Shown piece by piece: positions 520 through 44,570 of a DNA stretch of 64,000 nt (position 1 is the first letter of the stretch; each line of letters starts with the position of its first letter). The DNA is from Heteronotia binoei. Its lineage: Eukaryota. The translations under genes and the position numbers were made by a program. Below the pieces are notes generated by a model. It saw nothing but the letters and a program-made list of their open reading frames with translations. It did not search any database and was not told where the DNA came from. The stretch is from positions 8,556,001 to 8,620,000 of the forward strand of contig NC_083228.1 in the NCBI RefSeq assembly GCF_032191835.1, read 5' to 3'.

Positions 520-1415
520 TGCAGTGACATTTAATGGACAGGGGATTTTTACATTTCACAAATCTAAAACTAGGACTTCATTCCTCTCAGCTGGGATGGA
601 ATCCAGAGGTATCAGAGCGGCTGGGCCCAGCCGGCCTTTTCAGCATCCTCTTGAGTTCCTGTGGAGCCCTTTTCAGTCTCTGCCTTTAACCTTTTTACTT
701 GGGCTAAGGGGACACAAGAGAAGTATTTGGGGTGTCTTCTCTTCCAATCAAAATGTTCTTCTGTTGTGTATCCAGGAGCAATTTAGAGACCAACAAGATT
801 TTCAGGGGAGAAAGTTTAACTCCCAAAAGGTCATAGCCCCAGAACTGCAGACTGTCAACATAGTAAATAAAGTATTGTAGAGAGTGAAAATTCTCAGTCC
901 TGGGGATCTGGATAGCAACTAAGACAGAAAATAATCTATTTTCGCTTCAGGAAACAGATCAGGAATTTCAGCAATTGGGAGAGAAGGATATATTTTTTTC
1001 AAAACCCCTAAGAACAAGAGGGAAAGAAAATCTGCAAAAGTGTCCTACAATTTATCTTTCCAGGAATGGACCATTTCCTCCCATTAGAGTGAAATGGCCC
1101 AAGGCAGAGAGCATCTAATTCAGACTGTGAGAATGACCTCCATTGTGATTCAAGAGGTCCCCACTCAGGAAAGAGTCCTCAGATTGCAGGCTCATTTGCA
1201 CTCAGGTCTAATGGGGAGACAGATAGGGACCTCTGAGTCACCCCTTTGTTGCATGAAGCACCAAAGACCCTGGTTATGTCCCCTATTCCCTGGGGAAATA
1301 AAGCAGAGCTTTTAGGCAGAGCCCTTAAAGTCCAGCTACTGGATTCCAGCAGCTTTTCTGGAATAAAAACATCACCTAGGGAAAGTGGGCTATAAACTTC
1401 CAAAATATGTGCAAG
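520..1415 (+). promoter_or_regulatory. Locus-specific duplicated module, copy A
   Basis: 520-1250 aligns by eye with 12745-13510; 1080-1410 aligns in reverse with 31520-31950. Contains ATTTGCAC (~1194), TGAGTCA (1234-1240) and TATAAA (1391-1396). Promoter role is inferred. Confidence 0.55.
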
Positions 1416-1579
1416 AACACAGTGTGAGGAAATGACCCCTCTTTTTCAGTATTATAGTCACAAGCATGGTTGCCAGGGTGCCTGGAGATTTGACTCTCAC
1501 ACATCTGCTCTAAGAAGTGGACTTTGCTTACAGTTTCTAAGGCTTATGTGGCAGCTTTGCATTCTACATCTCTGAAGGG

Positions 1580-2690
1580 TGTTAGCCAGAACTACAGACA
1601 TGCTTCAGCTGCTCCTTGTGTGCCCAGTCTTGGCCGCTGCAGTGGAAGAAGCCAGGCTACCATGTTTCCAGCCTGTCTCCATGAACCAAAAAGGCTTACA
1701 CCAGAATCCATATTGCTTTCCTGATACAAGCATACCCTGCCAAGCTGAACTAATTCCTCCTTAGTGGGAAAGTCACAGGTACACACCCTGAGCCTGCAAG
1801 CAACCCATCCACTTCATAAAAGGGATTAATAGCTCAACTGGTAATCTTGAGTGTCTAGCAGTACCCTAGACAATGGATCCTGCCAGGACGAAGATAAGGA
1901 AGAGGAGAACATCTCCAGTCTTCATCAAGTCTTTTGTCTACCGGGAGTACCTAGGTGCATATCTGAGCCCCTATTGTTACCTTCCCAGTTAATCACATTT
2001 AAACTTAAGTACCCTGCCATTCCCATTCATATCCCAGTGCAGTACCCTGGAGCCATCCCAGATCCTGTAGCACCTTGGAAATTTCCAGGTTGCACAGGTA
2101 AAAGTGAAGCTCATTGGTCAAAACAGACATCCAATTGAATGTCACCCAAGAGCTCACCATTGGTCCCACTAATGTCCAGCCTTCGCTGTCATCACGGACC
2201 CTCCTTTCTCTCCTCCCTTGGACCTCCCAGCCCTAAGGGCCTAAGAGAGTCTATTTAACCTCTGACCCAACTCCACTCATGTGTGCTTCTATTCAGCAAC
2301 CCACCTTCCGCTGTCTAGATCCATCCCCAATTCTGGCCACAGTTTTGGGTCCATTTCCCCTGTCCTCATTCGTCGCCATCGGAGTCTTCCTTGGAGTCTG
2401 CGAGAGGTAGTATTACCCTGTCTGTTTACCCATATATGTTTCCCTGTCAATCTATCTACTTTTTCCTAGACCCTTTTATGAATGTGTGAATGTTTGTAAT
2501 TGTACCTTGTGTGAAAGAACTTTATCACTTCAAATAAATTACAATTGATTTTATTAAATTAGAGTCCTTTATTGAGCATTTACTGTCTGGACGGTTGAGC
2601 CTGGTATACAATTGATAACAAAGATCCTATTGGGTCAGCTGTCTCTCAGTCTAATTCCCCAAGTTCATTTTGAGAGCAGTTACCCTAACA
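1580..2690 (+). mobile_element. 5' LTR of an endogenous retroelement (about 1.1 kb)
   Basis: Begins TGTTAG and ends CTAACA (perfect inverted termini). Followed 4 nt later by a PBS, then leader and gag-like ORF. Confidence 0.75.
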
Positions 2691-2694
2691 GAAT

Positions 2695-2716
2695 TGGTGG
2701 AGAAAGCGTTGGCATT
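2695..2716 (+). promoter_or_regulatory. Primer-binding site, resembling complement of tRNA-Ala 3' end
   Basis: TGGTGGAGAAAGCGTTGGCATT versus the recalled tRNA-Ala(AGC) complement TGGTGGAGAATGCGGGCATC. First 10 nt identical. Confidence 0.7.
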
Positions 2717-2719
2717 ATC

Positions 2720-2757
2720 CTGTTTGTATGAACACACGCGTGTCTTCATACAGACAG
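2720..2757 (+). other. Stem-loop with palindromic loop in the retroviral leader
   Basis: CTGTTTGTATGAA / TTCATACAGACAG forms a 13-bp stem with one G.U pair, enclosing the palindrome ACACGCGTGT. Confidence 0.6.
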
Positions 2758-3165
2758 ACGTAGGGTTGCACCGTTCAAACAGTCTTGCTAGCGAGGCTAT
2801 TGCGTGAGTGATTGAGTGAATGAGTTCTGTGTGAACGGCTCTAGTGAGCATCTCTATAATTGTGGGTTGGGCTGCTCCCTTTCTATCATTCAGCGTGGAC
2901 TTCTCAGCCGCCCCTAGAAGGCCAGACACCTTGCAAAAGGACTGAGCCCGATAGATTGCAAGGGAGAAGTCCCGTGAAGCCTGGCCGCTGTCCCGAGGCC
3001 TTCTAAACGCGTCTATCGTGGGTGGGAATGTCAGGATAGGTCAGAGCTGTTAAGATCTGGACAGAGCACCCTTCCCTTCTCCCCTTTCTTTAGAGCTTAG
3101 TGCACACACGCACACACACTGCACATACACACTCATACACTTACACACACACGTTAAGTCCCTAC

Positions 3166-3688
3166 CCAACCCCGGTCGAGGCCAGTCGCAGTGACAGGCT
3201 CACCGCTAACTCCGGTCGAGGCCAGTCGCAGAGACAGGCTCACCGCTAACTCCGGTCGAGGCCAGTCGCAGAGACAGGCTCACCGCTAACTCCGGTCGAG
3301 GCCAGTCGCAGAGACAGGCTCACCGCTAACTCCGGTCGAGGCCAGTCGCAGAGACAGGCTCACCGCCAACTCAGGTCGAGGCCAGTCGCAGAGACAGGCT
3401 CGCCGCCAACTTAGGTCGAGGCCAGTCGCAGAGACAGGCTCGCCGCCAACTCAGGTCGAGGCCAGTCGCAGAGACAGGCTCACCGCTAACTCCGGTCGAG
3501 GCCAGTCGCAGAGACAGGCTCACCGCTAACTCCGGTCGAGGCCAGTCGCAGAGACAGGCTCGCCGCTAACTCAGGTCGAGGCCAGTCGCAGAGACAGGCT
3601 CGCCGCCAACCCCAGGTCGAGGCCAGTCGCAGAGACAGGCTCACCGCTAACTCCGGTCGAGGCCAGTCGCAGAGACAGGCTCGCCGCC
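3166..3688 (+). repeat. 40-bp CpG-rich tandem repeat, about 13 copies, in the retroelement leader
   Basis: Unit CACCGCTAACTCCGGTCGAGGCCAGTCGCAGAGACAGGCT recurs at 3201, 3241, 3281 ... 3601, 3642. Confidence 0.95.
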
Positions 3689-4362
3689 CAAAACTTTTAG
3701 CCGAAGCGCAATTAGAGATTGGCAGTAGGCAAAACAAAAGAAGGGAACATAAGTAAAGTTGCCAGCCCAAGTGTAAAATAGCACATAGGAGCCAGAAAGC
3801 ATCTGGAAATATGCTGCTAGTTCTTACACTTGGCTGTGCCTTTAAGAGAATTTAGTGGAAGGAGCAAGAAGCTCTCCCTTAGGGTTAAAAATTTGTCCCG
3901 GGTCTGAGGAGATAGGAACTCTTCCCAGCCGAAAAATTTCCCTTTTGCTTAGAGCCAACGGAGGAAAAGCTCAGGCTCTGAGACTTTTAAAACCTTTTGG
4001 TGAACTCAGGACTGCCCCACTAAGGAAAGGTGCAGGGCCAGTGACTTTTGATGGGTTTGGAGGCAGAGGCTAGAGAAAAGTCCTCCTGAGGACCTCAACA
4101 ATGTGTGCAAGGCCACAAGCCTATGCCACAAACATTTGCTAGTGTTGCAGAGAACTAAGGAAGGTCCTGCAACTCCCTCCTTTACTTGTGAGACACACAG
4201 AGGTGTCCTGGAAGTTCTTTGCTCCCCAATAGGCAGGAAAGTGCCAAGGAAAGCTCCTGCATCAGTTAATTTTGGTGGCCTGTGGTTAGGCACCTAACAG
4301 TGCAGGAAAACCAGCCCTGCAAGTAAAGTAAGAACTTAGAGAGGATACACCCCTGAGCTGAA

Positions 4363-6801
4363 ATGGATCTCTTCACCAAAAAGGAGGAAATCCCCAAACT
4401 GGAAAAGTGGCTGGTAAAGAAAGGGGATAACCCCTGGAAGAGGGGAGTCTTTAACAAAAGCTCCGACCCCCTACAGTTCCTCAGAGATACACTCGAGGAG
4501 CAATGTAAAGCCAAAACGATAAGCGCAGGGAAAATAGACCTGTTCGCTTCATGGGGTTTATTCATAGCCTTGCAGGACAGCGTGGCTATGATTAAACAAC
4601 TTAGAGAACAAAATCAGAAACAAGAGACAGAACTGGAACAAGCTCTTAAAGGTCATGCAACAGCATTAGAACAAGCATACCAAAAATATGCGGAAGAAAA
4701 CAATAACCTAGAACTAGACTGGCAAGAGGCAAAGAGGGAAGTAGAGCAGCTAAAGGTAGAGAAGTTTGCCTTAGCCATGGCACAGCAGGAAACTTTACCT
4801 GCTCTAAAAAAGGCCCAATCGCAGGTAAAAGCGTTGGGAAAAGAGCTGGAACAAACTAAAAACCGAAATGACAAATTGCAACATGCCCTAGAATACGCCT
4901 CAGAGAAAAACAAAAAGGCAAGGGAGGCAGTTAGTCACGAGGTATGTAAGAAGGAGATTGCCGCTCTACAAAAGAAATTAAACCTTAAAAGTGCTTTCAT
5001 AGCTGCCGTCTCAGCCCCTGGCCTCTATGAGTTTTCATCAGATGAGGAAAGTGAGGACGAGGCAGTTGGGAAGTTCAGAGCAGAACAGCCAGCCCCAGTC
5101 CGTCCTGTGGTCACTAAAAAGACCACAGCCAGGAAACAGAAGGAAGCTGAATCTGTAAAAGTAGTGAAGGAAACCAGATCTTGGGGAGCAGAGGATATTA
5201 AAATGACTGCCAGCTTCCTCGGCCCCTATAACATAGACACCTCAGTATTGTGGATGGCTAGCGCTAGAATTAACTACAAAGAAGCCTCCCTAACTGAATT
5301 AAACCATGTGCTGAGATTATGCGCCTCAGGCCCTGAACTAGACAAAGTAAGAAATGTAATGTATTGCCTGAACCCTTCTAATGCCACCATCTTAGAATGG
5401 ATGGCTGAGGTAATATCTTACACCTGGGATGGAGAGGATATAAAAGATCTCTACCATCAGACCTTACAAGGTCATGATGAGCATCCAGTGAACTATCTAA
5501 TAAGGAAGAAATTCCTAGCAGAAGCAGCTAAAGTAGTATTACCCAAAGACAATAGGGAACCAGATTACGAGAATCAAAATTTCATATCGGACGTGATCAG
5601 AGGTCTCAATATACCCACCGTGAAGTGCTATGGCATAACAGCCATGGTAAACACCACCTGGAAAGATCTAGAGGCTAATCTCTACAGAGTTGGCAAATTT
5701 ATGGTAAGAGAGAGTAAAATGAAAGCTGACTATGCAAAAAGGGAAATAATTCATGAAGACTACCCAGCTAGATTAAGTGCTTATGAGAAGGAGATAGAAA
5801 ATCTAACCCACACTCTCCATGAGGCCAAATGGAGACTGGAGAATGCTCTAAAGCATGCCCAAGTCTCTGAACAAAAAGTTGCTGTTTTAGAAACACAGCT
5901 CACTCAGGCACAATTTAATGGCAGAGGCCAGCACCATGCTTACTGGAATCAAGAGCAGGGTGGGCATGGAAAAGAGAGCCAGAACTGGAAGTTCCAAAAC
6001 AGTGGCTTTGGTTCCAGCTCTTCTTGCCATCCCCAGCTTGTCCCAAAGGTTCCCCTTCACAAGCAGGCTCATGCTCCTAGGCAGACACAGTCAGCCTCTG
6101 AGCAACCCTGTCCTCCCTCAGCCCAGTGGACCCCTCGAGACAAGGTCAGAATGGCAGCCTGGTCCCAGCTTAGAGCCACTGGAGCAGACATGAGGCAGTT
6201 TGATAAGCAGCCCACACATGTGCTACTTGCTGCCCTTTCAGAAGCCATGAAGCCACCAGGGCACATGGTTCCCAGAGCCACAGAGTTTGCAGAAAATGGA
6301 GATAGCTTCCCCAAGGCTACTGCTTTGGAAGATTTCCCTAATAAGGAAATGGTAGGGAAAATTACAAATCCTACCCAGGAAAAAGATTTAGAAATCCAAA
6401 AGCTTGCTGAGAAAAATCAGGAACTCCAGCAAAAATTAGAAGCTAGTAAAGAAAAGGAAACTGCCAGTCTCCTGCAACATGTCCTGGAGTCTTGCAGGGC
6501 CACAGAGAGGAGACTAGAAATTCTGGAAGGGCTGGATAAGAGGAAACATGGCGGGGCAAACCCAGCTGTGCAGCCCCAGACTTCTTTCCCCCATGAAAAT
6601 GAGAAAACAATCCCTGTTTCAGTTCTCTTACCCCAGAATCATGAAGGAAATGTGGTCTCTGAGCCTATGCAGAGTTCCACACTCATGGCACAAGGTATTC
6701 CTTTTAGCAAGGACTTGCTCCAGACACTCCTACATGAACAAGCCTCAGTCCTTCTTGCCAGAAATTTTCTGTCCTTAGCTCATCCCATTTGGGGAATTTG
6801 A
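4363..6801 (+). CDS. Gag-like protein, 812 aa, class III (ERV-L/spuma-related)-like
   Basis: Uninterrupted ATG ORF after LTR, PBS and leader. N-terminal coiled coil, PVRPVVTKK, no CCHC knuckle. Motif WSQLRATGADMRQFDKQPTHVLLAAL resembles the recalled ERV-L gag motif W-L-xxx-G...D-xx-PT-xx-LL. Confidence 0.75.
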   Translation: MDLFTKKEEIPKLEKWLVKKGDNPWKRGVFNKSSDPLQFLRDTLEEQCKAKTISAGKIDLFASWGLFIALQDSVAMIKQLREQNQKQETELEQALKGHATALEQAYQKYAEENNNLELDWQEAKREVEQLKVEKFALAMAQQETLPALKKAQSQVKALGKELEQTKNRNDKLQHALEYASEKNKKAREAVSHEVCKKEIAALQKKLNLKSAFIAAVSAPGLYEFSSDEESEDEAVGKFRAEQPAPVRPVVTKKTTARKQKEAESVKVVKETRSWGAEDIKMTASFLGPYNIDTSVLWMASARINYKEASLTELNHVLRLCASGPELDKVRNVMYCLNPSNATILEWMAEVISYTWDGEDIKDLYHQTLQGHDEHPVNYLIRKKFLAEAAKVVLPKDNREPDYENQNFISDVIRGLNIPTVKCYGITAMVNTTWKDLEANLYRVGKFMVRESKMKADYAKREIIHEDYPARLSAYEKEIENLTHTLHEAKWRLENALKHAQVSEQKVAVLETQLTQAQFNGRGQHHAYWNQEQGGHGKESQNWKFQNSGFGSSSSCHPQLVPKVPLHKQAHAPRQTQSASEQPCPPSAQWTPRDKVRMAAWSQLRATGADMRQFDKQPTHVLLAALSEAMKPPGHMVPRATEFAENGDSFPKATALEDFPNKEMVGKITNPTQEKDLEIQKLAEKNQELQQKLEASKEKETASLLQHVLESCRATERRLEILEGLDKRKHGGANPAVQPQTSFPHENEKTIPVSVLLPQNHEGNVVSEPMQSSTLMAQGIPFSKDLLQTLLHEQASVLLARNFLSLAHPIWGI

Positions 6802-9800
6802 AAGCCAGAATTCTGTGGAACTTCAGGGAACGGTAGTCCCACATGGGCAGGCAAGGTTCCTTTGTCTCTGAACCTCCCCCACCCAAAGGAAAATCTTACA
6901 TCTAGACTTGAATGTCTCTTAAAAACAGAGAGGTCTGGCTTTGTAAGGTCTAAAGGTAACAAGGGCACCTTTTCCCTTGACTAAATAAGAAAACATACAA
7001 GCAATGACTTGGACTACAATTAGACCAGGCCATTTCTCCAGGTGAGGCCTGGAGATCTCCTGGAATCTCAGCAAGGGTTCCAGCCTGCAGAGTTAGTTTT
7101 CTCTGTAGGGTAATGGGAGCTTGATGTAATATATTTAGGTTAACCCTTTAAAAATGCCAGCATCAAGTACCTGAGAAAGAGTGGTTGAAATAATTTTTGT
7201 TAATTCAAAGCATTCAGAGCAAAATGTAAGAAACTGACTGTTTTAACTTTCAAATTGGCTGAATGAAAATCTGTGAAACTCCCAAGTTCACCTTTCTCTC
7301 TCTCATGCTTATAAAGTCAGAACATATTTGTTTTCTCAGTTCTATGAATTTTAAATGGTATAGCCTCTGAGCTTGTACAGAGTGCCTGCAGATCAGCCCA
7401 AATAGAGCTGGCTAAAGTATTGCAAATGCTTAGCACTCTTGCCATCAGGAAGAAATGCTAATTGTTCTCCCTCTTGCTCAATGGAAGTCTGAAGCAGTGA
7501 AGGTTTGATAAGTAACTAAGGCAAAGGAATAGAGTTTTAAATGCATTGCCCTGAGAAGTTAAATTTTTATCTCAGGTCTCTTTAAGGTACAAGCAACTCA
7601 ATGTCTTTGAGAGAAAGCCTAATTTTCTTATAGACCTATAACTAGCCAGTGGCAAGAAGAATAGTTTTTGTTTGCCACCATTTGTGTAAAGAACTTTTGC
7701 CCCAGTATCTTCCAGTGGATTGCTGGCTAGGAAAGTTTTCTTGCAGAGCCTCAGAAGAGATCAAATTCAGTGTTTGTAATATAAGAGGTGATGCCTCTCC
7801 TTCTCAAAGGTCACAGCAACACAAGACAGCTAACCTCAAATGGGCAAATCCGTAATTTAAATTTTAAGGTACAGAAAGTAGAGCCTCCAGCTGCAGGAGC
7901 ATCAACAAATGATGTAGTACTGATTGGCAAATCTCATACAGACCCTCTTGAAATAAACTCAGCCAAATTCAGCTTGAGTTAAAGAAACTGGAAAGAGTTA
8001 CAATTTTGAGCCCCACCCAGGCAGAAAGCCCATGATTTTCCTCTCCACCTTTCTTTGTGAAAACTTATCAGGATCAGATAAGAGAGTACTGGCCAAATCC
8101 ATTGTGTCTGTTTTAGCCTTTTGTTAAGCTAAAGCCTTCCCTCACCCCAGAGGGAAGGAATTTTGGATTTGTCTGTTAAAACCTTCCCCTCCTTTCACAT
8201 CTGGGGGGGGGGGGGTGGAAATACAGTTGAGGTATTTTGTGCTATTTTGAATTCTCATCCCCTGACTTTGGGGTCTAAAAGATATAATTTCAAAGGTTTT
8301 TCATTACAAAACTTTTTTTTCAATGTTGCAGTCTCTCAGAGACAGCCTCTTCCCAGCCAGAGAAATACCTGGATGGAAGATGTGCATACTACTTTGTTTT
8401 TGTAAGGTTGCCAGTCTCCAGGTGGGACCTGGAGGTCTCTCCCAAAATCATAGCCTTTTCCCCAGTACATTGAGGCTAGTGCCTCTGGAGGAAATAAGTG
8501 TCCAAGGAAATGGACTGCATGCCTTGTGATTTCCAAATTTGACCCAAATTTCTAGAAATCTCCAGCCTGGAGCTGGCATCCCAAGGTTCTACTTACAGCA
8601 AATCCTTCTCTGCTAGAGAAAATCCTCTGCCTGTAAACTGCCCTAATACCAAGAGTTCTCCTAGATTAGAAGCTTTTTATCTCACAAATTTTGGTTCCTA
8701 CAAGAAGTATAGGACATCTGTACACTTTCTTGGGGTAAAAGTACCCTCTCCCTGTGCTTTTCCTCTCTCAAGCCTCAAGAACTAATACTCTTTGGCAGAA
8801 TTCCTGAAAGGTCTTGGTCTCCATTAGAAATTTGGACTCCTCAAATGTACTTCAGCCATTGATATCTTCATTTGCTCTCTGAATGTCATTTATAGTTATG
8901 TTCCATCTATGATCAATCTTCCCTTTGTGCTATTTGGTGAAGCTTGAGTTTTAATTTTAGTTTAATCCAGTCTGCCTGTGGAAAGAGGTATCCACATGTT
9001 CTTAAAGGGCCCCACCTTGGGGGGGTCAGTATCTTTGTTTGGCCTTAAGCAATATAATGACCAATAGTATATCTTGTTAGAACTAGACTTTTCCTGAGTG
9101 AAAACCCTTTTCTATTTTTCATGTTTTCAAAGAAATGAGCAATAATCTGTCAGATTCTTAACGTAGATTCCTCAGAGTTGATTTCTGATCATGATTTTCT
9201 TCTTGCTACTAAATGTCCTTTTGTGTTATGATTGCACCTATTAAGGCTTTCCAAATTAAGTCTTGTGTTATGCTCAAATTTTGGTCTACTTGATATTTCT
9301 ACTTGGTATCTCTGACTGTTATATTTCAATCTAGAATTGGTCATCTGCCTTGACCATTCTCTCTCCCTCAGTTATTATGATCACAGCATGTTGCCTTCTA
9401 GCAACACATTCTTTGCACTCTGTGTATGCACAGAGGAAAATTGTTCTATGGCACAAGCCTTAAACCTGGAGCATCATCCTAGTTCTGCCTTTTACTCCAT
9501 AAAAGGTTTCTTCCTAAAGAGATATGCTTTCATGCTTCAAGTCTTTCTTTTGACTTGTCCTTGCAACAACTCAGCATTTTAATCTTGGTAGTACAGATGC
9601 CCTGCCACATCTTTTTGCTTTTTATGAATTGTTTTAGTGTGTTTGTCAAGGAATTAACCATAATTTGATTTCTAGGATTTTGTAACTGTCTTGTTAAACT
9701 TGCTCATCTTTTCTTTCAATATAGATGTGCAGGGAATCTGGACCTGCAAATCAAATCTAATGCATGCTCAGTAGTTTTAAGAATTGTTTTATGTATGTGT

Positions 9801-10230
9801 AACCATTATGTTGCTTTTCAGAATTCTTGTTTTGTTAAGTTTTTGTTGGAATCTGTGCTCACATGTGAGATCGTTTTAGCTGAACTAGCCCAGAGAAAAA
9901 CTGGATTTAGTGGGACCTGATCAGCTCACTAATGTCCAGGGTTTTTATTTCTCTGCTCTAGCTCACCTGTCATTTTGGGTATGATCCCTCTCATATAAAG
10001 CTAACTAGCATTGTTCTATTGAGGCCTCAGTTTTTGTTTTTGAAGTTTTTCTATTGTTTTGACAATTTATTATATTCCAAAGCTATAGCAAAGGTTTTCT
10101 TTTGTCTCTTCTTTGTGGAACTATTTTCATTATATGGGGGACGCCCCAAACTATGGTCATTTTCCTGGAGCTCCAAGCTTATGCATAATGTTTTATTTTG
10201 CCCTGTTAATTTGGATGACATGCTGTAAGA
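6802..10230 (+). mobile_element. Degenerate or non-coding internal region of the retroelement
   Basis: No long ORF. Only weak RT-like fragments: ESP*FSSPPFFVK (~8024-8063) and TSVHFLGVKV (~8713-8742). No protease DTG or YxDD found. Confidence 0.3.
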
Positions 10231-10367
10231 ATCCAATTATCACCATCCTCAGGTAGCTGTTTTAGGGCCACAATTTTAGGGCAATTGTAGGACCAGCTGT
10301 AAGTATATTTATTCCTTTCTAACTCTATTGATTTCAGGGATTTTAGACTGGGTTAAGTCTGTATAGG

Positions 10368-10665
10368 AGCCCCGTGGCGCAGAGTGTTAAAGCTGCAGTA
10401 CTGCAGTCCTAAGCTCTGCTCCCAACCTGGGTTCGATCCCCGGCGGAAGCTGGGTTTTCAGGTAGCCAGCTCGAGGTTGGCTCAGCCTTCCATCCTTCCG
10501 AGGTCGGTAAAATGAGTCCGCAGCTTGCTGGGGGGGAAGTGTAGATGACTGGGGAAGGCAACGGCAAACCACCCCGTAAAAAAGTCTACCATGAAAACGT
10601 TGCGAAAGCAACGTCACCCCAGAGTCGGAAACGACTGCTGCTTGCACAGGGGACCTTTCCTTTTC
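10368..10665 (+). mobile_element. Sauria-type SINE with 14-bp TSD
   Basis: tRNA-like head and typical tail; TAAGTCTGTATAGG duplicated at 10354-10367 and 10666-10679. Confidence 0.9.
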
Positions 10666-11072
10666 TAAGTCTGTATAGGGTTGCATTGTGAGTCCCTCTG
10701 GTTTGCTTTTGCCTCAGTAGACTCAGGAGTGGGAAGTGCGGGCCTGTAGCTACAGGGGGCCCAGGGGGAGTCCAGGCCCATCCTTTCAAAACCCCCTTCC
10801 AACTCTATGGCCCCTCCGTTGGAGGGCCCTTCGCTGACCGCCACTCTGAACACGTAGTAGCCTTGCTGCTGGTCTTTTCGCTTTTTTCTCTCCCCTTCCC
10901 TAACACAGCAAGCAGAGCAAAGGGGGGGGGGAGTCAAGAGGGGAACATAAGAAAGGGGTGGGGGAGCGGAGCTGCTGTGACTGCCCAGGATAATGGCGGG
11001 GGGGGGGGCGGTAACTTGTGGAACTCAAGGCAGCTTACAGTACTGAGAGCGCAGGGCTGCCAGACCAGGTGG

Positions 11073-11559
11073 TAGGGTTGCCAAGTCCAATTTAAGAAAT
11101 ATCTGGGGACTTTGGGGGTGGAGCCAAGATCAAGGCTATGACAAGCATAATTGGACTCCAAAGGGAATTCTGGCCCTCACATTGAAAGGGACGTCACACC
11201 TTTTCAATTCCTTCCTTCCACAGGAAATAATGAAGGATAGGGGCATCTTTTTTGGGGGCTCATATAATTGGACCCCCTGGTCCAATCATTTTGAAATTTG
11301 GGGGGGTATTTTGGGGAGAGGCACTGGATGCTATACTGATAATTTGGTGCCTCTACCTCAAAAAACAGCCTCCCCCAGAGCCCCAGGTACCCACAGATCA
11401 ATTCTCATTATTTTCTATGGGAATAAATCTCCATAGGGAATAACAGAGTTTCCAGCAGACATTTCCCTCCCCTCCCCCCGCTTTCTGAGGACCCTGAAGC
11501 GGGGGGAGGGCCTCCAAACCGGGGGTTCCCCTGCCCCCACCTGGGGATTGGCAACCCTA
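11073..11559. mobile_element. MITE with TAGGGTTGCCAA terminal inverted repeats
   Basis: TIRs at 11073-11084 and 11548-11559. Related full or partial copies near 19507-19968, 25675-25996, 26480-26850, 34500-35030, 43290-43655, 50740-51245 and 52020-52482. Confidence 0.8.
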
Positions 11560-12739
11560 CCAGGTGCCCCCCCCTCCCCCCAAACAACAGATCCTGTTGT
11601 GGGCCCCACCAAACAGCCCTGGGGAAGGGCCAGTTTCTTTGACTTGCCTTGTTTTTAGAACCCCATCCAGACCACCTCCTGTTGCTTCCATTGCTTTTAG
11701 TAGGAGAGGTTAGGATGGATTTTGATGGCCTTGCCAATCGGTGCCCTTGCCAAATCCAAGCCCATTTAATCCCTTGTTTTTTTCTCCCTGAGAAATGTGG
11801 CCTGGATCACTCCAGCAATTGTGGGAAGGGGAAATAATGTGGGAGGGGAGTTGTAGATGGGGGGGGGAGTAGCTGCTGTGAATGAAACAACCCCAATATT
11901 AAGGATTATGTCCCTTCCCCAGAACTTCCAGCCGTGAAGCCCTTTCCAAATTTGCTGGTCTCTCAGCGCCTTTCTAGGAAATCCATCTGTTTCTCAAGGG
12001 AAGGCCTTTTGCTTCCCCAAAATTGAGCTTCTCTGCTCTGCCACTGAAGCGCTCTGTGGGATCTTGGGCCAGTCACACCCTCAGCCTGGCCCACCTCACA
12101 GGGGGGTTGTGAGGATCAAATGGGAAAAGGGAGAATGTGTTATACCACTCTAGCTTGCCATTGGGGACCAAAGTGGGGGGGGGGTAAAAATGAAGGGAAT
12201 CGTACTGGTCTTTAAGGTGCATCCACTAGACCTTGCTTTCCTATGGGATGTTTAGGCCAGATTCTTTGTGGAGTGAGCACACAGAATCCAGCAGTCAGGG
12301 CGCCGCTCGTGAGCAGTGTTCCCTCTGAGTTAGTGTGAGCTAGCTCACCATTTTTTAGTCTCCAGCTCACACATTTTTGTCTCAGCTCAGGAAAAAGGGA
12401 CCCAGAGCGTACTAATTTATGCAGGAGCTCACCACTTTAATGGCAGTAGCTCACAAAGTAGAATTTCTGCTCACGAGACTCCACAGCTCAGAGGGAACAT
12501 CGCTCATGAGGTATCCTCCCTGGTTTTCCCCCTATTCTTCAGGCCCTGAATGTGAATTCTGGAGGCAGCCACAGAAGGAAGCAGACCACAGTCACATAGC
12601 AACAGGTGGACGTGATGAGCAATGTAAATGATGTTTATAATGTGATGCACTTACATTGCACTTGAAGGATTGAGTTCCATTGTCACCTCTGCTTTAAATA
12701 TATTATTAATTTAGAGTCTTGGGTATTGTAATCAGCGAA

Positions 12740-13775
12740 ATGTACTGACATTTAATGGGCATATTTTGCATTTCACAAATCTAAAACTGGTACTTCATTC
12801 CTCTCAACTGGGAAGGAATCCAGAGGTCTCAGAAAGGCCGATCTCTTCAGAATCCTCTTCAGGTCTTGTGAAACCTTTTACAGTCTCTATCTTTAACTTT
12901 TTTACTTGGGCTAAGAGGACACAAGAGAAGTGTTTGGCGAATATCTTCTCCTCCAATCAAAATATTCTTCTGTTGTGTTTCAGGAGCAACTTAAGAGACC
13001 AACAAGATTTTCAGAGTAGAAAGTTTAACTCTTTTTTTTAATAACTTAAATTTTATTAAATTTTTATACTAGTCAATCAGCAACACTTATAGAATATTGC
13101 CCATCAAAGGTAAAGGAATAGCAATGAAAAACAAACTGCAGACTGTCAATATAGTAAATGAAGTATTGTGGAGAGCAAGAAAATTCTTAGTCCTGGGAAT
13201 CTGGATAGCAACTGAGACAGAAAATCCATCTATTTAGGCTTCAGGAAACAGATCAGGAATTTCAACAATTTTGGGAGAAGGATGCATTTTTTTCAAAAAC
13301 AAGAGGGAGAGAAAATCTCCTGCAAAAGTGTCCTATAACATCTTTCCAGTGAAATGGCCCAAGGCAGAGAGTATCTAACTCAGACTGCAGGAATGACCTC
13401 CATTGTGATTCAAGGGGCCCCACCCAGGAAAGAATCCTCCAGATTGTAGGCCCATTTGCACTCAGGTATAATGGGGAGATAGATAAGGGACCTCTGAGTC
13501 ACCCTCTGAAGCACAAGAGACCCTCAGGGATGGTGCCAAATCACCCTCCATGCTTATCTCCCATTGAAGGATGATTAAGGTGTTGCCTCTCAGGAGGACT
13601 ATAAGAGCTTGGCCCCAACCCAGCTTCCCTCATCCAGGGATCCTGCTCTAGAAGAAGACCTGGTCCTGCTGTGATCTAGCCGAGAGGCTTTGCCCTAAAT
13701 TCAACTGAACAAAGAGCCAACTTCTCTCCACAGAAGCCTGACAAGATAGAAGCTGTTGCTGGAGGAGGTAAGCAG
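12740..13775 (+). promoter_or_regulatory. Duplicated module, copy B2
   Basis: Homologous to copy A, and in reverse to 44340-44570. ATTTGCAC (~13454), TGAGTCA (13495-13501), TATAAG (13600-13605), donor GAG|GTAAGC at 13767/13768. Confidence 0.55.
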
Positions 13776-14089
13776 GGGTGCCAGATAATTGTTGGCGGGG
13801 GGTGGTGGTGGTCTGGGGGTAGAATCTTCCTGGTCCCTCCAAGCTGCAGAGTCTTGTGAGTAAAAATTCTACTTTCTAAGCTACTGGTATTAAAGCTGTG
13901 AGCTACTGGCATGAAAGTTGTGAGCTCCTGTATAAATCATTGTGCTCTGGAGCCATTTTTCCTGAGCTGAGACAAACGTGTGTGAGCCGGAAGCTAAAAA
14001 TCTGTGAGCTAGCTCCCGCTAACTCAGTTCAGAGGGAACACTGCTCCTAGGTCATGTGGCTTCACTGGAATTATCCGTTCATTGAACAA

Positions 14090-15135: not shown

Positions 15136-15149
15136 TATGTTCAGGTGGC

Positions 15150-16149: not shown

Positions 16150-16286
16150 ATCCAATGAGGATCCTGTGAATTTAGGGGGAGATATTTGTGAGTTTCCTGC
16201 ATTGTGCAGGGGGTTGGACTAGATGACCCTGGAGTCCCTTCCAACTCTGTGATTCCAACTATATGATTCCAACTCTATGATTCTAT
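16150..16286 (+). mobile_element. CR1 LINE 3' end
   Basis: GGACTAGATGACCCTGGAG...CCTTCCAACTCT and GATTCTAT-type tail, matching 39900-40016. Confidence 0.85.
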
Positions 16287-16382
16287 CCCCAGGTGTCAAT
16301 TTTAAATTGTAGCTATAAACATACTTATTCCTTTCTAAATCCTGTCAAAAAGATTCGGTTTCCGAGACGCTTCGGAGGCAAG

Positions 16383-17306: not shown

Positions 17307-17312
17307 AATAAA
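17307..17312 (+). terminator. Polyadenylation signal of the ZMAT2 copy
   Basis: AATAAA 325 nt after the stop codon. Confidence 0.55.
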
Positions 17313-32000: not shown

Positions 32001-32232
32001 AAGGACACCTTGGCATGAGATTTCATTAAATATAGCTGCAATTTGCAATGTTGCTGCCCTATATGTGCTGTACTGTGTAACTTCTCCCCTTACTGGTTTT
32101 AAGTGTCTTCTATTCCCACACTCATCTCCAAAGTTCTAAAAACAGAGAGTGAAGAAGGGGGTAGTCTCTAAGCAAGTGAAAAAAGATGTGCTATATTTTA
32201 AAAACAAAAAAACACCAGATTCCTAGTCTCCT

Positions 32233-40930: not shown

Positions 40931-42682
40931 CTACTGTCCCAAGAAAGAGGCCATGGGATCATCTGGACGCTGACGCTTCATTTGATAAGCCTCCATTTCT
41001 TCTTCTGTTGGCTCCCGGCTTTCATACATGCTGTTATAAGGTCTCTTTCTTTCATCTAATTGCATGATCTCTTTCACGTGGAGGAGACGGGCTTCTTCTG
41101 CATTTAGTGCCTTTTTCAGTTTTTCCTGTTTTTTTCTCTCTTCTCCCTCACTGTCAGAACTGGTACTTTTCTGATGCCTTTTCTTCTTCTTCTTTTCTTC
41201 TCCCTGTTTTTCTTGATGGATCTCTACAAGAGTTTTGGGAACAGTCCCGTACTCTTCCTCATTTGATTCTCCAGCAGGCAATTCTTCATCAGCATTAACC
41301 ATTTCTTTTCCAGCCTCTCCTGTGCAGTATGAATACTTGACAAATGAGTAGCAGCATTTATATCCCCATTTGTCGTCCTTCCAATACGAACCCCAAATAC
41401 ACGTGTGATTGTTGATCATAACGTCTTCTTCATATTTAGAGCGAGCAACTGCCTTTTCTTGGCCTTTAATAACTGTTCCATGTCTAGAATATTCCACATA
41501 ATCTTCTGTTTGAGCAAGCAGTAATTCATTTGGTGGGGCATCCAGATGTTCTTGCCCTCCATACTTCTCCAGGATGCTCTCTTTCTGCTGCTCCTTGAAG
41601 TCTTCTTTTTTCACTTTGAACGATTTGTACAAAAGTTCGAGTTTTGTAGGATCTGCTTGGAGATGAACCTCAGAGCCTTTTTCATAAGCCTCCCAAGCAA
41701 ATAGCTGTGTTTGTGCCATTGAAATGGTATCCCCAGTGTAACGAACAAAGTTATCACCTGCATAACTGACCTCATCTGGATTCTTTCCTGCATTGGCATA
41801 TGGATTCTCCCTCATTGCTCTTGTCTTGGGATCATAGTATGCTGAATTGGGGTCTAGATCCCGCAAGTATTTGGCAATATCTTCTCGAATGCGCAGATTC
41901 CGGACTGTAATGCGCCGCTTGGAGTCAAAATTCTGCCCAGGCATGTCAATGTCATCTGCGTATTTGTCTTCATCCTCATCTTCGCTGTTATGATCTCGTT
42001 CCATCTGTGAATTTGGTTCCTCTTCGCCCCACCGATGCCTTGGAGAGCTCACCTGCTCTGTCAGTTTTCCGGAAGCCAACTCCTCCTGCAGTTTCTGTGC
42101 TTTCAGTGTGCGCTTAGCTAAATCAACTTTGGCATATTCCTCTACAATCTTCACGTGCTCTTCTGGGTTGTAGCCATTCCAACGGTCTCTTTTTCCATCA
42201 TAATCAAACTTCAGCTGTGGCTGCATGTGCTCATCAGGTGCAATGTTCGTTCCTGTGCATTTTGCTCCAACTTTTCTAGGTCTCTCCAGGCAATCTTTCT
42301 TCTTATGTGTCAACGCACCACAGTTTTCACAGGCTCCTTTGCGGTATTTTGTTGCAACGGAATTCTCTTTCACCCCTCGCTTATACCATTCTCCTTGTGC
42401 AGTCAATTCTTTCTGCTTCTCTGGCTGGGGTCTCTGATGCTTTAGTGTAGGTCTTTTGGAAGGGTCTATATACCATGGCACAGAGGAAATGTACTGAGGA
42501 ATATGAGGATTAATGTCCTTTCCCTCTTCATCCACTTCAGCTGGTGCATTGCCCAGTTTTCTCTGTTCTTCCAACTCTTTCTTCTTTCTCCAGTCCTCCC
42601 TTGTCATTTTTTTAGGCTCTTCTAAACCATTTGACCCTCCAGCAGGGTTAGATGCTATTGCTTCCATATTTACAGATGCCAT
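40931..42682 (-). CDS. SLU7: Intronless SLU7 retrocopy, full length 583 aa
   Basis: [46 protein letters not shown]...[14 protein letters not shown]...[12 protein letters not shown]. No introns or stops. ATG placed at 42682 by homology. Confidence 0.95.
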
Positions 42683-42727
42683 CGTCGTCTTGCTAAAGAT
42701 CAGGCTCTCCTCGTACGCCACCGGTTC

Positions 42728-42805
42728 CACTTCCCACAATGCACGCTGCAACACCGTTTCCTGCAATAAGACGACAAACTGACGTCACTAATGGCGCATT
42801 TCCGG
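42728..42805 (-). promoter_or_regulatory. Housekeeping-type promoter motifs at the 5' end of the SLU7 copy
   Basis: CCGGAAAT (42805-42798), ATGGCG/CGCCAT (42791-42796), TGACGTCA (42780-42787), GGAAGTG (42734-42728). Confidence 0.55.
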
Positions 42806-43808
42806 TGAGACATCTAAACCTACCACCAAAAATTCTTTTTTTACAAAAAAAATGCAATGTTCTCTTTGTTTGCAGAGCTACACAAAGTCCAAGAAATCCC
42901 AAAACGGGAGTACACTGGAATGAGACTACTGTTTGACAAAGATCCTGAACTAACTTACAGCTTGCAGCTTTTACAGCAAACCTTTCAGGATCCTGCATTA
43001 ATTTAGAACTTTTTTAACAACCATGGTTACAAAAAATTATTTAACCAAACTGAAGACTTTTAAATGCATCAGACTGACGGAACTGGAGGCAGCGCCATCT
43101 AATATCAGATTTTTCAATAGTAACAGAACCAAAAAAAACTTTTTATATCAACACAAGTTTGAAATGAACAACAGACTGGAATTGGTACAAAGGAGAGGAC
43201 TTTATTTAATGTTTACAATTTATCTCTGAAATGACTCCACTTGAAGGACTGATCACTTTAAAAGCTAATTTACCAGTTTGTGCCATAACTCTCAACACGA
43301 GTAGATGGCGTTCCCATAGGAAATAATGGAGAATTGATCCATGGCTATCTGGGGCTCTGGGGTGGAGGGGCTGTTTTATGAAGTAGAGACACCAAAGTTT
43401 TGAAACTTGGGGGGTATTTGCAGTGCCTCTCCCTGAAATACCCCCCAAGTTTCAAAAGGATTGATCCATGAGCCCCAAAAGAAGGTGCCCCTCTCCTTCA
43501 TTATTTCCTATGGAGGGAAGGCATTTTAAAAGGTGTGCCGTCCCTTTCAATGTGATGGCCAGAACTCCCTTGGAGTTCAATTATGCTTGTCACACCCTTG
43601 CTCCCACCCCCAAAGTCTCCAGCTATTTCTTGAACGGGACCTGGCAACCCTTCTAGGATCTGAGTAGGCAGGTTCCATTCTGAGGATTTCTTCCCGCACT
43701 GCTGAGAAGTTTCCAACCCGCTCAGTCATTTGAACCGCACAATGAACACACCAGACACACAACCAGGCAAAAGGGAGGCAGAAAAACCAAGGAACCCCCC
43801 CGACTTAC

Positions 43809-43996
43809 TTGGACCCTGCATTCCGGGGCGCCGATCCTTCTTGCCAGCTCCTCCCTCGTGCCGATGCCTGGGTACCGGTGCTTCTCAAAGGCGCCCACCA
43901 AAATCTCCAGCTGCTGCTTCGTGAAGACCGTCCGCTTCCTCCTGCGGCCCGCTGCGGAGCTGCCCTCCAGCCACTGGGGCCCCGGGAAAGCGGCGC
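43809..43996 (-). CDS. DUX-like homeobox gene 2, helix-1/2 exon, in a CpG island
   Basis: AAFPGPQWLEGSSAAGRRRKRTVFTKQQLEILVGAFEKHRYPGIGTREELARRIGAPECRVQ then GTAAGT. Phase-1 acceptor CTTTCCCCGCAG. Downstream intron resembles 27420-27480. Not in the ORF track because it has no start codon. Confidence 0.9.
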
Positions 43997-44339
43997 CTGC
44001 GGGGAAAGCACAAAGGGGGCGCTCGCCTTGAAGCCGCTCCCTCCAAACCCGACCTCGCGGCCTCGCCCGCCCGCAGCAGCAGAAGGGAAGGGCAGGGCAG
44101 GTCCCCGGGGCGAGCCCCAGTCACCCCGAGGTGGGAAAGCCTTTGTGCCGTCCAGGAATCGCAGAGCCCCAGCTGTTTGGTGCCCACCGACCGTGATCGG
44201 GGGAGACTTTGCCCGAAGCTTGCTCGAGGGTGACCCAGCCTTCTATCCTCCCGAGGTCAGTTAAACGAGGACCCGGCTTGCTGGAGGGAAGGTGTAGCTG
44301 ACTGGGGAAGGCAACGGCAAAGCGCCCCGTCCAAAGCTG

Positions 44340-44570
44340 AAAACCAAGTCTTCTTCTACGGCACAGTCATTGGACAAGGGATGCTGGCTCAGGGGCCAAG
44401 ATTTAAGGGCTCCTTGTGGGGGCCCTGCCTTGACCCCGCCCTTGATCGTCTCCAATGGGAGGTGACCTGGGAGGGTCGTGAAGTTCTCAGCTGGGGAATG
44501 AGGCCTTCTTCAGGTTGTTTTGATGCTTTATGCAAAGAGGGGGTGACTCAGAGGGACCTTATCTTGATCT
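44340..44570 (-). promoter_or_regulatory. Duplicated module, copy D, pointing towards homeobox gene 2
   Basis: TGACTCA (44544-44550). On the minus strand CCATTGG, GGGCGGGG and CTTAAAT, at the position where copy B2 has TATAAG. Confidence 0.5.

What the first reader, a model, noticed from the sequence alone, without database searches (positions are those of the whole stretch)
520..44570. Candidate system: retro-derived ORFs plugged into duplicated DUX-like transcription units
Seen: five copies of one locus-specific module (A 520-1415, B2 12740-13775, B1 15150-15740, C 30940-32000, D 44340-44570). Each is oriented so its AP-1, TATA and donor motifs point at an open retro-derived ORF on that strand: A to gag, B2/B1 to ZMAT2, C to homeobox 1 then KIN17, D to homeobox 2 then SLU7. 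Orientation agrees in all four units even though A/B and C/D are inverted relative to each other. Established: mammalian DUX genes are PRD-class regulators of zygotic genome activation that duplicate readily. Inference: a duplicated germline or early-embryo promoter repeatedly captured retroposed sequences and now drives them.
Basis: partly seen in the sequence, partly recalled or inferred. Interest (0 to 1): 0.9.

Follow-up and report, generated by a model that had tools for sequence, protein, structure and literature searches.

The report
Gecko sDUX-like genes hosting spliceosome retrocopies
The repeated "module" is the front end (promoter, tiny first exon, start of intron 1) of a locally multiplied, mostly decayed DUX-related homeobox gene of a gecko, and intronless copies of spliceosome protein genes have landed inside these gene copies pointing the same way, which is curious but not yet shown to be a working system.

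Summary
The window is Heteronotia binoei chromosome CM063330.1, 8,556,001-8,620,000. The module is real but is four copies, not five: B2 and B1 are one copy split by inserted repeats, and D is an old remnant. At least 15 copies lie in about 133 kb sampled from this 310-kb region. None is in 56 kb from another chromosome. In one full copy, NCBI's annotated first coding exon of a homeodomain gene lies inside the module. So the module is the 5' end of an sDUX-like gene family, not a transposon.

"A to gag" is not capture. A gag-only LTR retroelement with its own LTR (1423-2690) cut copy A.

ZMAT2 replaced about 31 nt of intron 1 of copy B. SLU7 sits in the homeobox intron of copy D. The KIN17 fragment is fused into the 5'UTR of a sister gene copy outside the window. 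All are in sense. ZMAT2 and SLU7 are intact; KIN17 is truncated and drifting.

A fourth, broken retrocopy (WDR70) lies 8.5 kb left of the window. All four parent proteins are spliceosome components, and I cannot explain that.

Promoter capture is structurally plausible. No transcript evidence was available.

The parts
411..1422 (+). Module copy A. It is the 5' region of sDUX-like gene copy A, of the type that lacks the TATA-like box and exon 1. AP-1 site at 1234-1240, second TATA at 1391. An LTR insertion cuts it at 1422/1423.
1423..10199 (+). Gag-only LTR retroelement inserted in sense into intron 1 of copy A. 5' LTR 1423-2690 (starts TG, ends CA). 40-bp tandem repeats 3166-3688. Gag-like ORF 4363-6801. 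There is no pol, and the 3' LTR is missing here.
10294..12617 (+). The rest of gene copy A: distal intron 1 (10294-12281, with SINE insertions) and a decayed homeobox exon remnant carrying a stop (about 12531-12617).
12731..13837 (+). Module copy B, first part. AP-1 at 13495, CCAAT-like at 13561, TATA-like TATAAGAG at 13600. Exon 1 has ATA instead of ATG at 13746-13748. Donor GT at 13768.
13838..15134 (.).
15135..15726 (+). Module copy B, second part (proximal intron 1). It has a degenerate second TATA (GGCTAGAAAC at 15419) and donor-like CTGTAAGTGG at 15463.
16153..16285 (+). A 3' tail of a CR1-type LINE. It abuts the 56-nt intron-1 segment (16286-16341) that precedes the ZMAT2 insert.
16342..17645 (+). 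ZMAT2 retrocopy (CDS 16383-16982, 199 aa, intact). It replaces about 31 nt of intron 1 of copy B, and intron homology resumes at 17646.
24293..25138 (-). KIN17 retro-fragment, residues 4-285 only, with no ATG. It is a deletion derivative of the arrangement seen in L003 and L007.
25364..25486 (-). Last exon of sDUX-like copy C (homeodomain helix 3, VWFQNRK). The stop comes 35 codons after the homeodomain.
27530..27705 (-). Homeobox exon of copy C (homeodomain residues 1-46), with canonical acceptor and donor.
27898..29256 (+). 452-aa ORF inside intron 1 of copy C, antisense to the gene. It is probably the C-terminal part of an L1 ORF2, judged by eye from a Cys/His motif. It has no Pfam hit.
   Evidence: reading of the sequence
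31262..32027 (-). Module copy C. AP-1 at 31797, second TATA at 31545, donor at 31501. It lacks the TATA-like box and exon 1. It is collinear with the annotated gene in L007 down to the homeobox exon.
40931..42682 (-). SLU7 retrocopy CDS (583 aa, intact). It lies 1.0 kb downstream of the homeobox exon of copy D, in the homeobox intron, in sense.
43809..43996 (-). Homeobox exon of copy D (homeodomain residues 1-46). No helix-3 exon was found in the window.
44343..44564 (-). Module remnant D, the old promoter of copy D. AP-1 at 44550, CCATTGGA at 44458, TATA-like CCTTAAAT at about 44405.

Best explanation
The module is the 5' end of an sDUX-like, single-homeobox, PRD-class gene. It comprises:
- an upstream region with a conserved AP-1 / CCAAT-like / TATA-like core;
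- a 22-nt first coding exon (ATG GCA GCT GCT GCT GGA GGA G, then GTAAGC);
- proximal intron 1, which holds a second TATA-plus-donor unit.

Segmental duplication, tandem and inverted, has multiplied this gene across about 8.30-8.62 Mb of H. binoei chromosome CM063330.1. The window holds four decayed copies.
- A: split by an LTR element; homeobox exon dead.
- B: start codon lost; truncated after proximal intron 1.
- C: promoter-proximal part and exon 1 deleted; homeobox exons structurally intact.
- D: old; no helix-3 exon.

Intronless cDNA copies of host genes have been inserted into these units, always in sense.
- ZMAT2 in intron 1 of B.
- SLU7 in the homeobox intron of D.
- KIN17 in the 5'UTR of a sister copy. 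The window's fragment derives from that arrangement by an 8.9-kb deletion.
- WDR70, just outside the window, in intron 1 of a further copy.

Shown: the anatomy, the orientations and the junctions. Inferred: transcription from the sDUX-like promoters reads or splices into the retrocopies. In B and in the KIN17 fusion the retrocopy's ATG is the first ATG of the predicted transcript. If that inference holds, ZMAT2 and SLU7 could be expressed where sDUX is active. The gag ORF is unrelated to this; it belongs to a separate LTR retroelement.
For: - Species and coordinates.
- Module copies and identities.
- The annotated homeodomain gene (164 aa, PF00046) has its CDS start at L007 19295, inside a full-length module.
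- From that exon to the homeobox exon, the sequence is collinear with window C and with A.
- The exon-1 phase fits the homeobox exon frame, and all splice sites are canonical.
- Homeodomain matches: platypus sDUX (8EJO) 53.9 bits, DUX4 HD2 46 bits, OTX2 47 bits; PMC9882399. Lizard sDUX is known to be multi-copy in mixed orientations: PMC3004920.
- The module is absent from 56 kb of another chromosome that shares the common SINE and CR1 repeats.
- ZMAT2 junctions with resumed intron homology.
- KIN17 junction in the 5'UTR.
- ZMAT2 is 196/199 identical to human. SLU7 shows no excess divergence.
- LTR element.
Against: - No transcript, CAGE or chromatin evidence could be consulted.
- NCBI calls ZMAT2 and SLU7 only as single-exon CDS and calls no homeobox gene in the window.
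- Copies A and C lack the TATA-like box and exon 1.
- The modules are strongly CpG-depleted (o/e 0.10-0.25).
- The KIN17 copies have dN/dS of 0.46-1.0 and a long stem branch. WDR70 is broken and has no module directly upstream.
- ZMAT2 is 2.6 kb from B's exon 1, and repeats lie between them.
- ZMAT2 and SLU7 may be young rather than constrained. The parental genes of this species could not be retrieved to decide this.
Confidence: 0.7

Rival explanations
1. The module is the LTR (or another terminal part) of a retroelement. A and B would be the two LTRs of a provirus whose gag is the 812-aa ORF, and the other copies would be solo LTRs.
For: A and B are direct repeats 12.2 kb apart that flank a gag-like ORF. 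The module carries AP-1, TATA and AATAAA-like motifs, as LTRs do.
Against: - The gag element has its own LTR at 1423-2690. The same LTR flanks a sister element on another chromosome as a 100% identical 1234-bp pair with TG..CA ends.
- Module A ends exactly where that LTR begins.
- The module has no fixed ends.
- It is collinear with an annotated gene's exon 1, intron 1 and homeobox exon.
- It is absent beside the sister element in L006.
Confidence: 0.03
2. Coincidence in a junk-rich, duplication-prone region. The retrocopies would be ordinary processed pseudogenes, some still young enough to be intact, that landed among dead sDUX-like copies. No promoter would drive anything.
For: - The KIN17 copies are truncated and near neutral.
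- WDR70 has an in-frame stop and a C-terminal frameshift.
- The homeobox copies in the window are decayed.
- The region is full of SINE, CR1, L1 and LTR insertions.
- There is no expression evidence.
Against: - Four of four retrocopies are in sense within sDUX-like units.
- Two were inserted within about 45 nt of the same paralogous intron site.
- All four parents are spliceosome proteins.
- ZMAT2 and SLU7 have intact ORFs without excess amino-acid change.
- In B and in the KIN17 fusion the retrocopy ATG is the first ATG of the predicted transcript (reading of the sequence).
Confidence: 0.22
3. Mutational footprint of one cell state. Retroposition or cDNA capture would have occurred in cells, such as cleavage-stage embryo or germ line, where the sDUX array is open and break-prone and where mRNAs for spliceosome factors are abundant. 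Such cDNAs would then pile up in the array whether or not they are useful.
For: - Clustering, sense bias and a shared insertion hot spot.
- A mix of intact and decayed copies.
- ZMAT2 has a 31-nt target deletion, no target-site duplication and at most A5 as a tail. WDR70 has no A-run after its AATAAA. These features fit break-repair capture better than classical L1 insertion.
- DUX factors act at zygotic genome activation and switch on retroelements (PMC9882399).
Against: There is no evidence that these four mRNAs are unusually abundant in that state in geckos. Usual retrocopy parents, such as ribosomal protein genes, are absent from the 133 kb sampled. The timing of the insertions is unknown.
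Confidence: 0.3

Closest known systems
sDUX, the single-homeobox ancestor of the mammalian DUX family (Leidenroth and Hewitt 2010, PMC3004920; Bosnakovski et al. 2023, PMC9882399)
   Same: The homeodomain matches platypus sDUX best. The intron lies at homeodomain position 46/47. There is one homeobox per unit. Copies are multiple, local and in both orientations, as reported for the anole lizard.
   Different: Here the last exon of copy C stops 35 codons after the homeodomain, whereas a long open last exon (mean 989 bp) is described for sDUX. Synteny with TMEM254 (CJ057) and ANXA11 was not checked; the only neighbour seen is a BMS1 exon. Most copies are decayed. No phylogeny was run.
DUX4 / D4Z4 and DUXC macrosatellite arrays of placental mammals
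   Same: A DUX-family gene amplified locally into many copies, with retro-derived sequence involved and a presumed early-embryo or germ-line promoter.
   Different: D4Z4 is a uniform 3.3-kb head-to-tail array in which DUX4 itself is the retrogene. Here the units are irregular (a roughly 52-kb duplication plus inverted blocks), the homeobox genes keep their introns, and the retro-derived sequences are unrelated host genes.
Retrogenes that acquire expression from a host gene's promoter or 5' exons, a general model of retrogene birth in mammals and flies (from my own knowledge, not checked here)
   Same: An intronless cDNA copy sits in sense inside a host transcription unit, downstream of its promoter and first exon. 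The host start codon is absent in B, so the retrocopy ATG comes first.
   Different: One promoter family hosts several different retrocopies, all from one functional class. Chimeric transcripts have not been shown.
Mouse Zrsr1 (U2af1-rs1), a splicing-factor retrogene inside an intron of Commd1 (from my own knowledge, not checked here)
   Same: A retrocopy of a spliceosome-related gene residing in an intron of a host gene.
   Different: As I recall it, Zrsr1 is a single gene lying antisense to its host, with its own imprinted promoter. Here there are four different genes, in sense, within a gene-family array.
Non-autonomous gag-only LTR retroelements (for the 1423-10199 element)
   Same: An LTR with TG..CA ends, a purine-rich stretch just upstream of the sister element's 3' LTR, and a gag with a capsid fold. 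A homologue sits in the gag position before pol in a full element.
   Different: Neither this copy nor the young sister copy has pol or env. The gag family is so far seen only in geckos and matches no Pfam family.

Membership tests
sDUX / DUX (PRD-class homeobox) | Homeodomain most similar to sDUX/DUX homeodomains | tested here: met
   the copy-D exon scores 53.9 bits to 8EJO (platypus sDUX), 46.3 to DUX4 HD2 and 47.2 to OTX2; copy C matches DUX4 HD2 best, but weakly (21.5 bits).
sDUX / DUX (PRD-class homeobox) | Intron inside the homeobox between residues 46 and 47 | tested here: met
   the exons end ...RVQ|GTAAGT (43809) and ...WVQ|GTAAGT (27530). The next exon starts CAG|GTCTGGTTTCAGAAC at 25486.
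sDUX / DUX (PRD-class homeobox) | Long open reading frame in the last exon (mean 989 bp in sDUX) | tested here: not met
   copy C stops 35 codons after the homeodomain. The L003 and L007 copies have a stop inside helix 3. Copy D has no last exon in the window.
sDUX / DUX (PRD-class homeobox) | Synteny with TMEM254 (CJ057) and ANXA11 | not tested
   Only a BMS1 exon was seen, at about 59725-59820. The wider neighbourhood was not fetched.
sDUX / DUX (PRD-class homeobox) | Clusters with sDUX in a homeodomain phylogeny | not tested
   The protein search with the homeobox exon found no candidates, so no set of sDUX sequences was at hand.
Processed (LINE-mediated) retrocopy | Uninterrupted copy of the coding sequence of a multi-exon parent | tested here: met
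   The gecko parental KIN17 is multi-exon, with a 21-kb range next to ATP5F1C. The intron counts of ZMAT2, SLU7 and WDR70 parents rest on general knowledge.
Processed (LINE-mediated) retrocopy | Poly(A) tail at the 3' end | tested here: inconclusive
   ZMAT2 ends in A5 at the right junction. No A-run follows the AATAAA of WDR70. KIN17 is 3'-truncated. The 3' end of SLU7 was not delimited.
Processed (LINE-mediated) retrocopy | Target-site duplication | tested here: not met
   ZMAT2 replaced about 31 nt of target sequence and there is no duplication. The other junctions are not resolvable.
Retrogene using a captured host promoter | Sense orientation downstream of a host promoter and 5' exon | tested here: met
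   The pairs are B to ZMAT2, F to KIN17 (L003, L007) and D to SLU7. The WDR70 copy has intron-1 sequence but no module directly upstream.
Retrogene using a captured host promoter | Transcripts that start at the host promoter and include the retrocopy | not testable with these tools
   No RNA-seq, CAGE or cDNA resource for this species was available. Exact-protein look-ups found only the genome record.
Retrogene using a captured host promoter | Purifying selection on the retrocopy | tested here: inconclusive
   KIN17 copies have dN/dS of 0.46-1.0, so the feature is not met for them. ZMAT2 and SLU7 are intact with no excess amino-acid change, but the parental genes of this species could not be retrieved for a dS estimate.
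LTR retroelement (for 1423-10199) | Flanking LTRs with TG..CA ends | tested here: met
   the sister element in L006 has 1234-bp LTRs that are 100% identical, with TG..CA ends. The window copy keeps only the 5' LTR (1423-2690).
LTR retroelement (for 1423-10199) | Gag with a capsid fold, in the gag position | tested here: met
   homologue P0125 precedes a 1264-aa pol (RVT_1, RNase_H, rve); residues 245-450 are modelled at pLDDT about 90, and the top fold matches are PNMA2, MLV, BLV and HTLV capsids (probability up to 0.99, E about 8e-3).
LTR retroelement (for 1423-10199) | Pol (reverse transcriptase, integrase) | tested here: not met
   neither the window copy nor the L006 copy has a pol-like ORF. 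The element is non-autonomous.
D4Z4-type macrosatellite | Uniform head-to-tail units, each holding one DUX ORF | tested here: not met
   module spacing is irregular (3-6 kb). There is one roughly 52-kb duplication at 94-98.6% identity, plus inverted blocks and many rearrangements.

The most novel reading that the evidence does not exclude
The sDUX-like array would serve as an expression platform for intronless copies of late-acting spliceosome factors. ZMAT2 and SLU7 would be in use now; KIN17 and WDR70 would be earlier members that have since decayed. Firing of the sDUX-type promoter in the germ line or at zygotic genome activation would then supply splicing factors from transcripts that need little or no splicing themselves. 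That would link the DUX programme to the start of zygotic splicing.
Probability: 0.1. Interest if true: 0.85.

Novelty: new variant of a known kind. Interest (0 to 1): 0.6.

Why it matters
Multi-copy sDUX loci and promoter capture by retrocopies are each known. What is new is one promoter family hosting four different retrocopies, all in sense. Two went in at almost the same intron site. All four derive from spliceosome proteins. If the intact ZMAT2 and SLU7 copies are transcribed from sDUX-like promoters, this is a natural case of repeated retrogene recruitment by an early-embryo or germ-line promoter outside mammals. It would also offer a possible handle on how splicing capacity is set up at genome activation. 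If they are not transcribed, the locus still marks an insertion hot spot, and the bias towards one functional class still needs an explanation.

The work also flags likely annotation artefacts. The 405-aa KIN17-like model stitches together fragments 42 kb apart. V2R and MHC-I gene models have absorbed pieces of gag.

Tried and rejected
- Module as LTR of the gag element. Rejected: the element's own LTR is 1423-2690 and recurs on another chromosome.
- A shared RNA leader joined to the retrocopies by template switching. The 56 nt before ZMAT2 and before WDR70 are 96% identical. However, the segment is ordinary intron-1 sequence. Intron homology continues upstream in the WDR70 copy and resumes downstream of ZMAT2. 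These are therefore genomic insertions, not chimeric cDNAs.
- Pfam on the 812-aa ORF and on its homologues: no retroviral family. The single-sequence structure model was useless, with pLDDT 44.
- Protein search with the homeobox exon: no candidates. This left no sDUX sequence set and no phylogeny.
- Retrieving the parental ZMAT2 and SLU7 of H. binoei through cluster listings: not among the members shown. No dN/dS could be computed for these two.
- The 184 nt between module F and the KIN17 ATG: only the last ~17 nt match a gecko KIN17 5'UTR. The origin of the rest is unknown.
- Rfam scan for snRNA copies, prompted by the spliceosome theme: only tRNA-like SINE heads.
- Literature search for ZMAT2 or SLU7 retrogenes, or for this locus: nothing relevant.
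- NCBIfam on WDR70: no hit, because that library covers prokaryotic families.

Full report
**Origin of the window.** Exact look-ups of the ZMAT2-like and SLU7-like proteins place the window on Heteronotia binoei (Bynoe's gecko) assembly GCA_032191835.1, chromosome CM063330.1, positions 8,556,001-8,620,000. Species names on related proteins agree. The DNA is CpG-depleted and rich in interspersed repeats. It has one N run, 48933-49064, which I did not touch.

**The observation.** Self-BLAST confirms the repeated module.
- A 510-1243 matches B2 12731-13504 at 81-82%.
- A 1051-1423 matches C 31988-31510, inverted, at 77-81%.
- B1 15278-15705 matches C 31685-31262 at 76%.
- D is only 46 bp (44564-44519), plus a second collinear 58-bp block (44400-44343) that matches B 13608-13664.

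TGAGTCA occurs in A, B, C and D. A TATA box and a CTGTAAGTGG donor occur in the distal part.

**What the module is.** I fetched related stretches of the same chromosome through the KIN17-like paralogues: L003 (8.359-8.380 Mb), L007 (8.307-8.328 Mb) and L008, which adds 27.2 kb to the left of the window.
- L003 and L007 each hold four more module copies. The left flank holds three or four.
- L007 and L003 are copies of a roughly 52-kb duplication, 94-98.6% identical.
- The left flank is largely an inverted copy of L003 and also duplicates window 31317-34316.
- One copy in L007 (17805-19960) is full length. It runs straight through where window B carries 1.3 kb of repeats (13838-15134). B2 and B1 are therefore one copy.
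- NCBI's annotation places the CDS start of a 164-aa homeodomain protein at L007 19295, inside this module. The sequence there reads ATGGCAGCTGCTGCTGGAGGAG|GTAAGC.
- From that exon the L007 sequence is collinear with window C all the way to the homeobox exon at 27705. It is also collinear with window 10294-12281, downstream of A.
- The 22-nt exon leaves phase 1, which fits the frame of the homeobox exon. All splice sites are canonical.

So the module is upstream region, exon 1 and proximal intron 1 of a homeobox gene family. It is absent from 56 kb of another chromosome (L006), although that stretch shares the common SINE and CR1 families with the window. That sample is too small to exclude a low-copy dispersed repeat.

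**The homeoboxes.** Each unit has one homeobox, split at residue 46/47. Among solved structures, the best single-domain match of copy D is the platypus sDUX homeodomain (8EJO, 53.9 bits). DUX4 HD2 (46 bits) and OTX2 follow. The identity of 8EJO comes from PMC9882399. Leidenroth and Hewitt reported that lizard sDUX occurs as several local copies in different orientations (PMC3004920). The copies in the window look decayed.
- A has a homeobox remnant with a stop.
- B has ATA in place of ATG and ends after proximal intron 1.
- C lacks the TATA-like box and exon 1. It carries K for R at homeodomain position 53 and stops 35 codons after the homeodomain.
- D has no helix-3 exon in the window.

NCBI calls no homeobox gene in the window.

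**A and 'gag'.** The 812-aa ORF (4363-6801) has no Pfam match. It belongs to a dispersed, gecko-only family. One homologue lies in the gag position, in front of a 1264-aa pol and a third ORF, on an assembled contig. With an alignment, residues 245-450 fold confidently, and the top structural matches are retroelement capsids such as PNMA2, MLV, BLV, HTLV and Arc. So 'gag' is right.

However, window 1423-10199 is collinear with an element on chromosome CM063339.1. That element's two 1234-bp LTRs are 100% identical and correspond to window 1423-2690. Module A ends at 1422, exactly where this LTR starts with TGTGAGG. The element is a gag-only LTR retroelement, with no pol in either copy. It inserted into intron 1 of gene copy A, and the window copy lacks its 3' LTR. 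A does not 'point at' gag in any designed sense.

**ZMAT2.** The CDS 16383-16982 is intact. It is 196/199 identical to human ZMAT2 and differs at two residues from the alligator and bird protein. Alignment with other copies of intron 1 fixes both junctions. Intron homology runs to ...CCTTTCTAAATC at 16341 and resumes at 17646. About 31 nt of target is missing, there is no target-site duplication, and the insert ends in only A5. A CR1 tail (16153-16285) lies just upstream. B's exon 1 has lost its ATG, and neither the exon nor the 56-nt intron segment contains an ATG. In a transcript starting at B, the ZMAT2 ATG would therefore be the first one. This last point is an inference from the sequence.

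**KIN17.** The window fragment covers residues 4-285 only and has no ATG. L003 and L007 hold copies with the ATG (92% protein identity). There the homology to the module stops about 200 nt after the TATA-like box. After 184 further nt the KIN17 ATG follows as the first ATG. The last ~17 nt of that stretch match a gecko KIN17 5'UTR. The window arrangement (homeobox last exon, then KIN17 from codon 4) differs from L003 by an 8.9-kb gap at exactly that point. I read the gap as a deletion in the window's copy.

The three copies have pairwise dN/dS of 0.46-1.0. They sit on a stem of 0.3 substitutions per site, attached near the gekkonid KIN17 sequences. That is an old copy under relaxed constraint. 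A different fragment (residues 202-367, with stops) lies in the left flank. The 405-aa RefSeq model joins it to the window fragment across 42 kb, which is probably an artefact.

**SLU7.** The CDS 42682-40931 (583 aa) is intact. It is 539/582 identical to Anolis SLU7, no more diverged than other squamate orthologues are from each other. It lies 1.0 kb downstream of the donor of copy D's homeobox exon, in sense. Its ends could not be delimited.

**A fourth retrocopy.** In the left flank, about 8.5 kb from the window, lies an intronless WDR70 copy. It has an in-frame stop at codon 133 and a C-terminal frameshift. The same intron-1 segment precedes it as precedes ZMAT2 (96% identity over 56 nt). 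Its junction is only about 15-45 nt further along. It has no module directly upstream.

**The unexplained theme.** ZMAT2, SLU7, KIN17 and WDR70 are all chains in human spliceosome structures: 5O9Z, 5XJC, 7ABH and 6ZYM. Screening the long ORFs of the ~133 kb sampled turned up no other host retrocopy; decayed fragments would have been missed. All four are in sense within sDUX-like units. All four keep CpG o/e of 0.42-0.68, while the modules sit at 0.10-0.25. Chance seems an unlikely cause of the shared function, but I cannot say whether selection or a mutational bias is behind it. Two of the four are dead, which argues against a simple 'selected set'.

**Verdict.** It fails for gag. The functional half, that the promoter drives them, is plausible but untested. 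The kind of event, retrocopies borrowing a host promoter within a multi-copy sDUX locus, is known. The repeated use of one promoter family and the spliceosome-only cargo are new.

The LTR element was only described and compared.

Noticed in passing
L008 43577-45391 (chromosome 8,545,670-8,547,484, about 8.5 kb left of the window): An intronless WDR70 copy with an in-frame stop at codon 133 and a C-terminal frameshift. It is a fourth spliceosome-protein retrocopy in the same array, inserted within about 45 nt of the paralogous site used by ZMAT2.
   Followed up: yes
window about 59725-59820 (+): A 32-residue match to BMS1 residues 120-151 (GKKRRLTIIECGCDI..MIDLAKVADLV), flanked by unrelated sequence. 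It looks like one exon of a normal multi-exon BMS1 gene starting at the right end of the window.
   Followed up: partly
L006 31814-42495 (H. binoei chromosome CM063339.1): A sister gag-only LTR element with 100% identical 1234-bp LTRs and an intact 882-aa gag ORF, so it inserted recently. RefSeq models for a V2R-like and an MHC-I-like protein have absorbed pieces of this gag family, which looks like an annotation artefact.
   Followed up: partly
window 25060 to L008 52267: The 405-aa KIN17-like RefSeq model (XP_060096965) joins two separate retro-fragments 42 kb apart. It spans ZMAT2 and two sDUX-like copies and is probably not a real gene.
   Followed up: partly
window 55608-57480; 22388-23818; 54499-55016; 3166-3688: Four tandem arrays. 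The first has 213-bp units built from a CR1 3' tail. The second has units of about 92 bp that create 380-390-aa repeat ORFs. The third has 104-bp units. The fourth has 40-bp units inside the LTR element's leader.
   Followed up: no
window 16383-16982, 40931-42682, 24293-25138; L008 43577-45391: All four retrocopies keep CpG o/e of 0.42-0.68, even the old and drifting KIN17 copies. The promoter modules and the LTR element are at 0.10-0.25. This may reflect low germ-line methylation over the retrocopies.
   Followed up: partly
window 27898-29256 (+); 39026-40011 (+): The first is a 452-aa ORF with a Cys/His motif like the C-terminal part of L1 ORF2, and it has no Pfam hit. The second is a CR1-type reverse-transcriptase fragment with its 3' tail. 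Both LINE types are therefore present locally.
   Followed up: no
window 36353-37644 and 46840-48173: A 1.3-kb direct duplication at 79% identity, flanked by inverted CR1 pieces (39453-40010 against 46828-46270). It is further evidence of segmental rearrangement between SLU7 and the right part of the window.
   Followed up: no
window 32246-32317 (+); L003 2427-2498; L007 2588-2659; L008 47205-47276 and 47921-47992: tRNA-like Rfam hits. The window copy lies in a stretch that also matches another chromosome, so these are probably the heads of tRNA-derived SINEs rather than tRNA genes.
   Followed up: no
L003 764-916 and L007 924-1076: Copies of the homeobox last exon, 96% identical to the window's, carry a stop inside helix 3 (VWFQN*K). 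Those gene copies are pseudogenes.
   Followed up: yes
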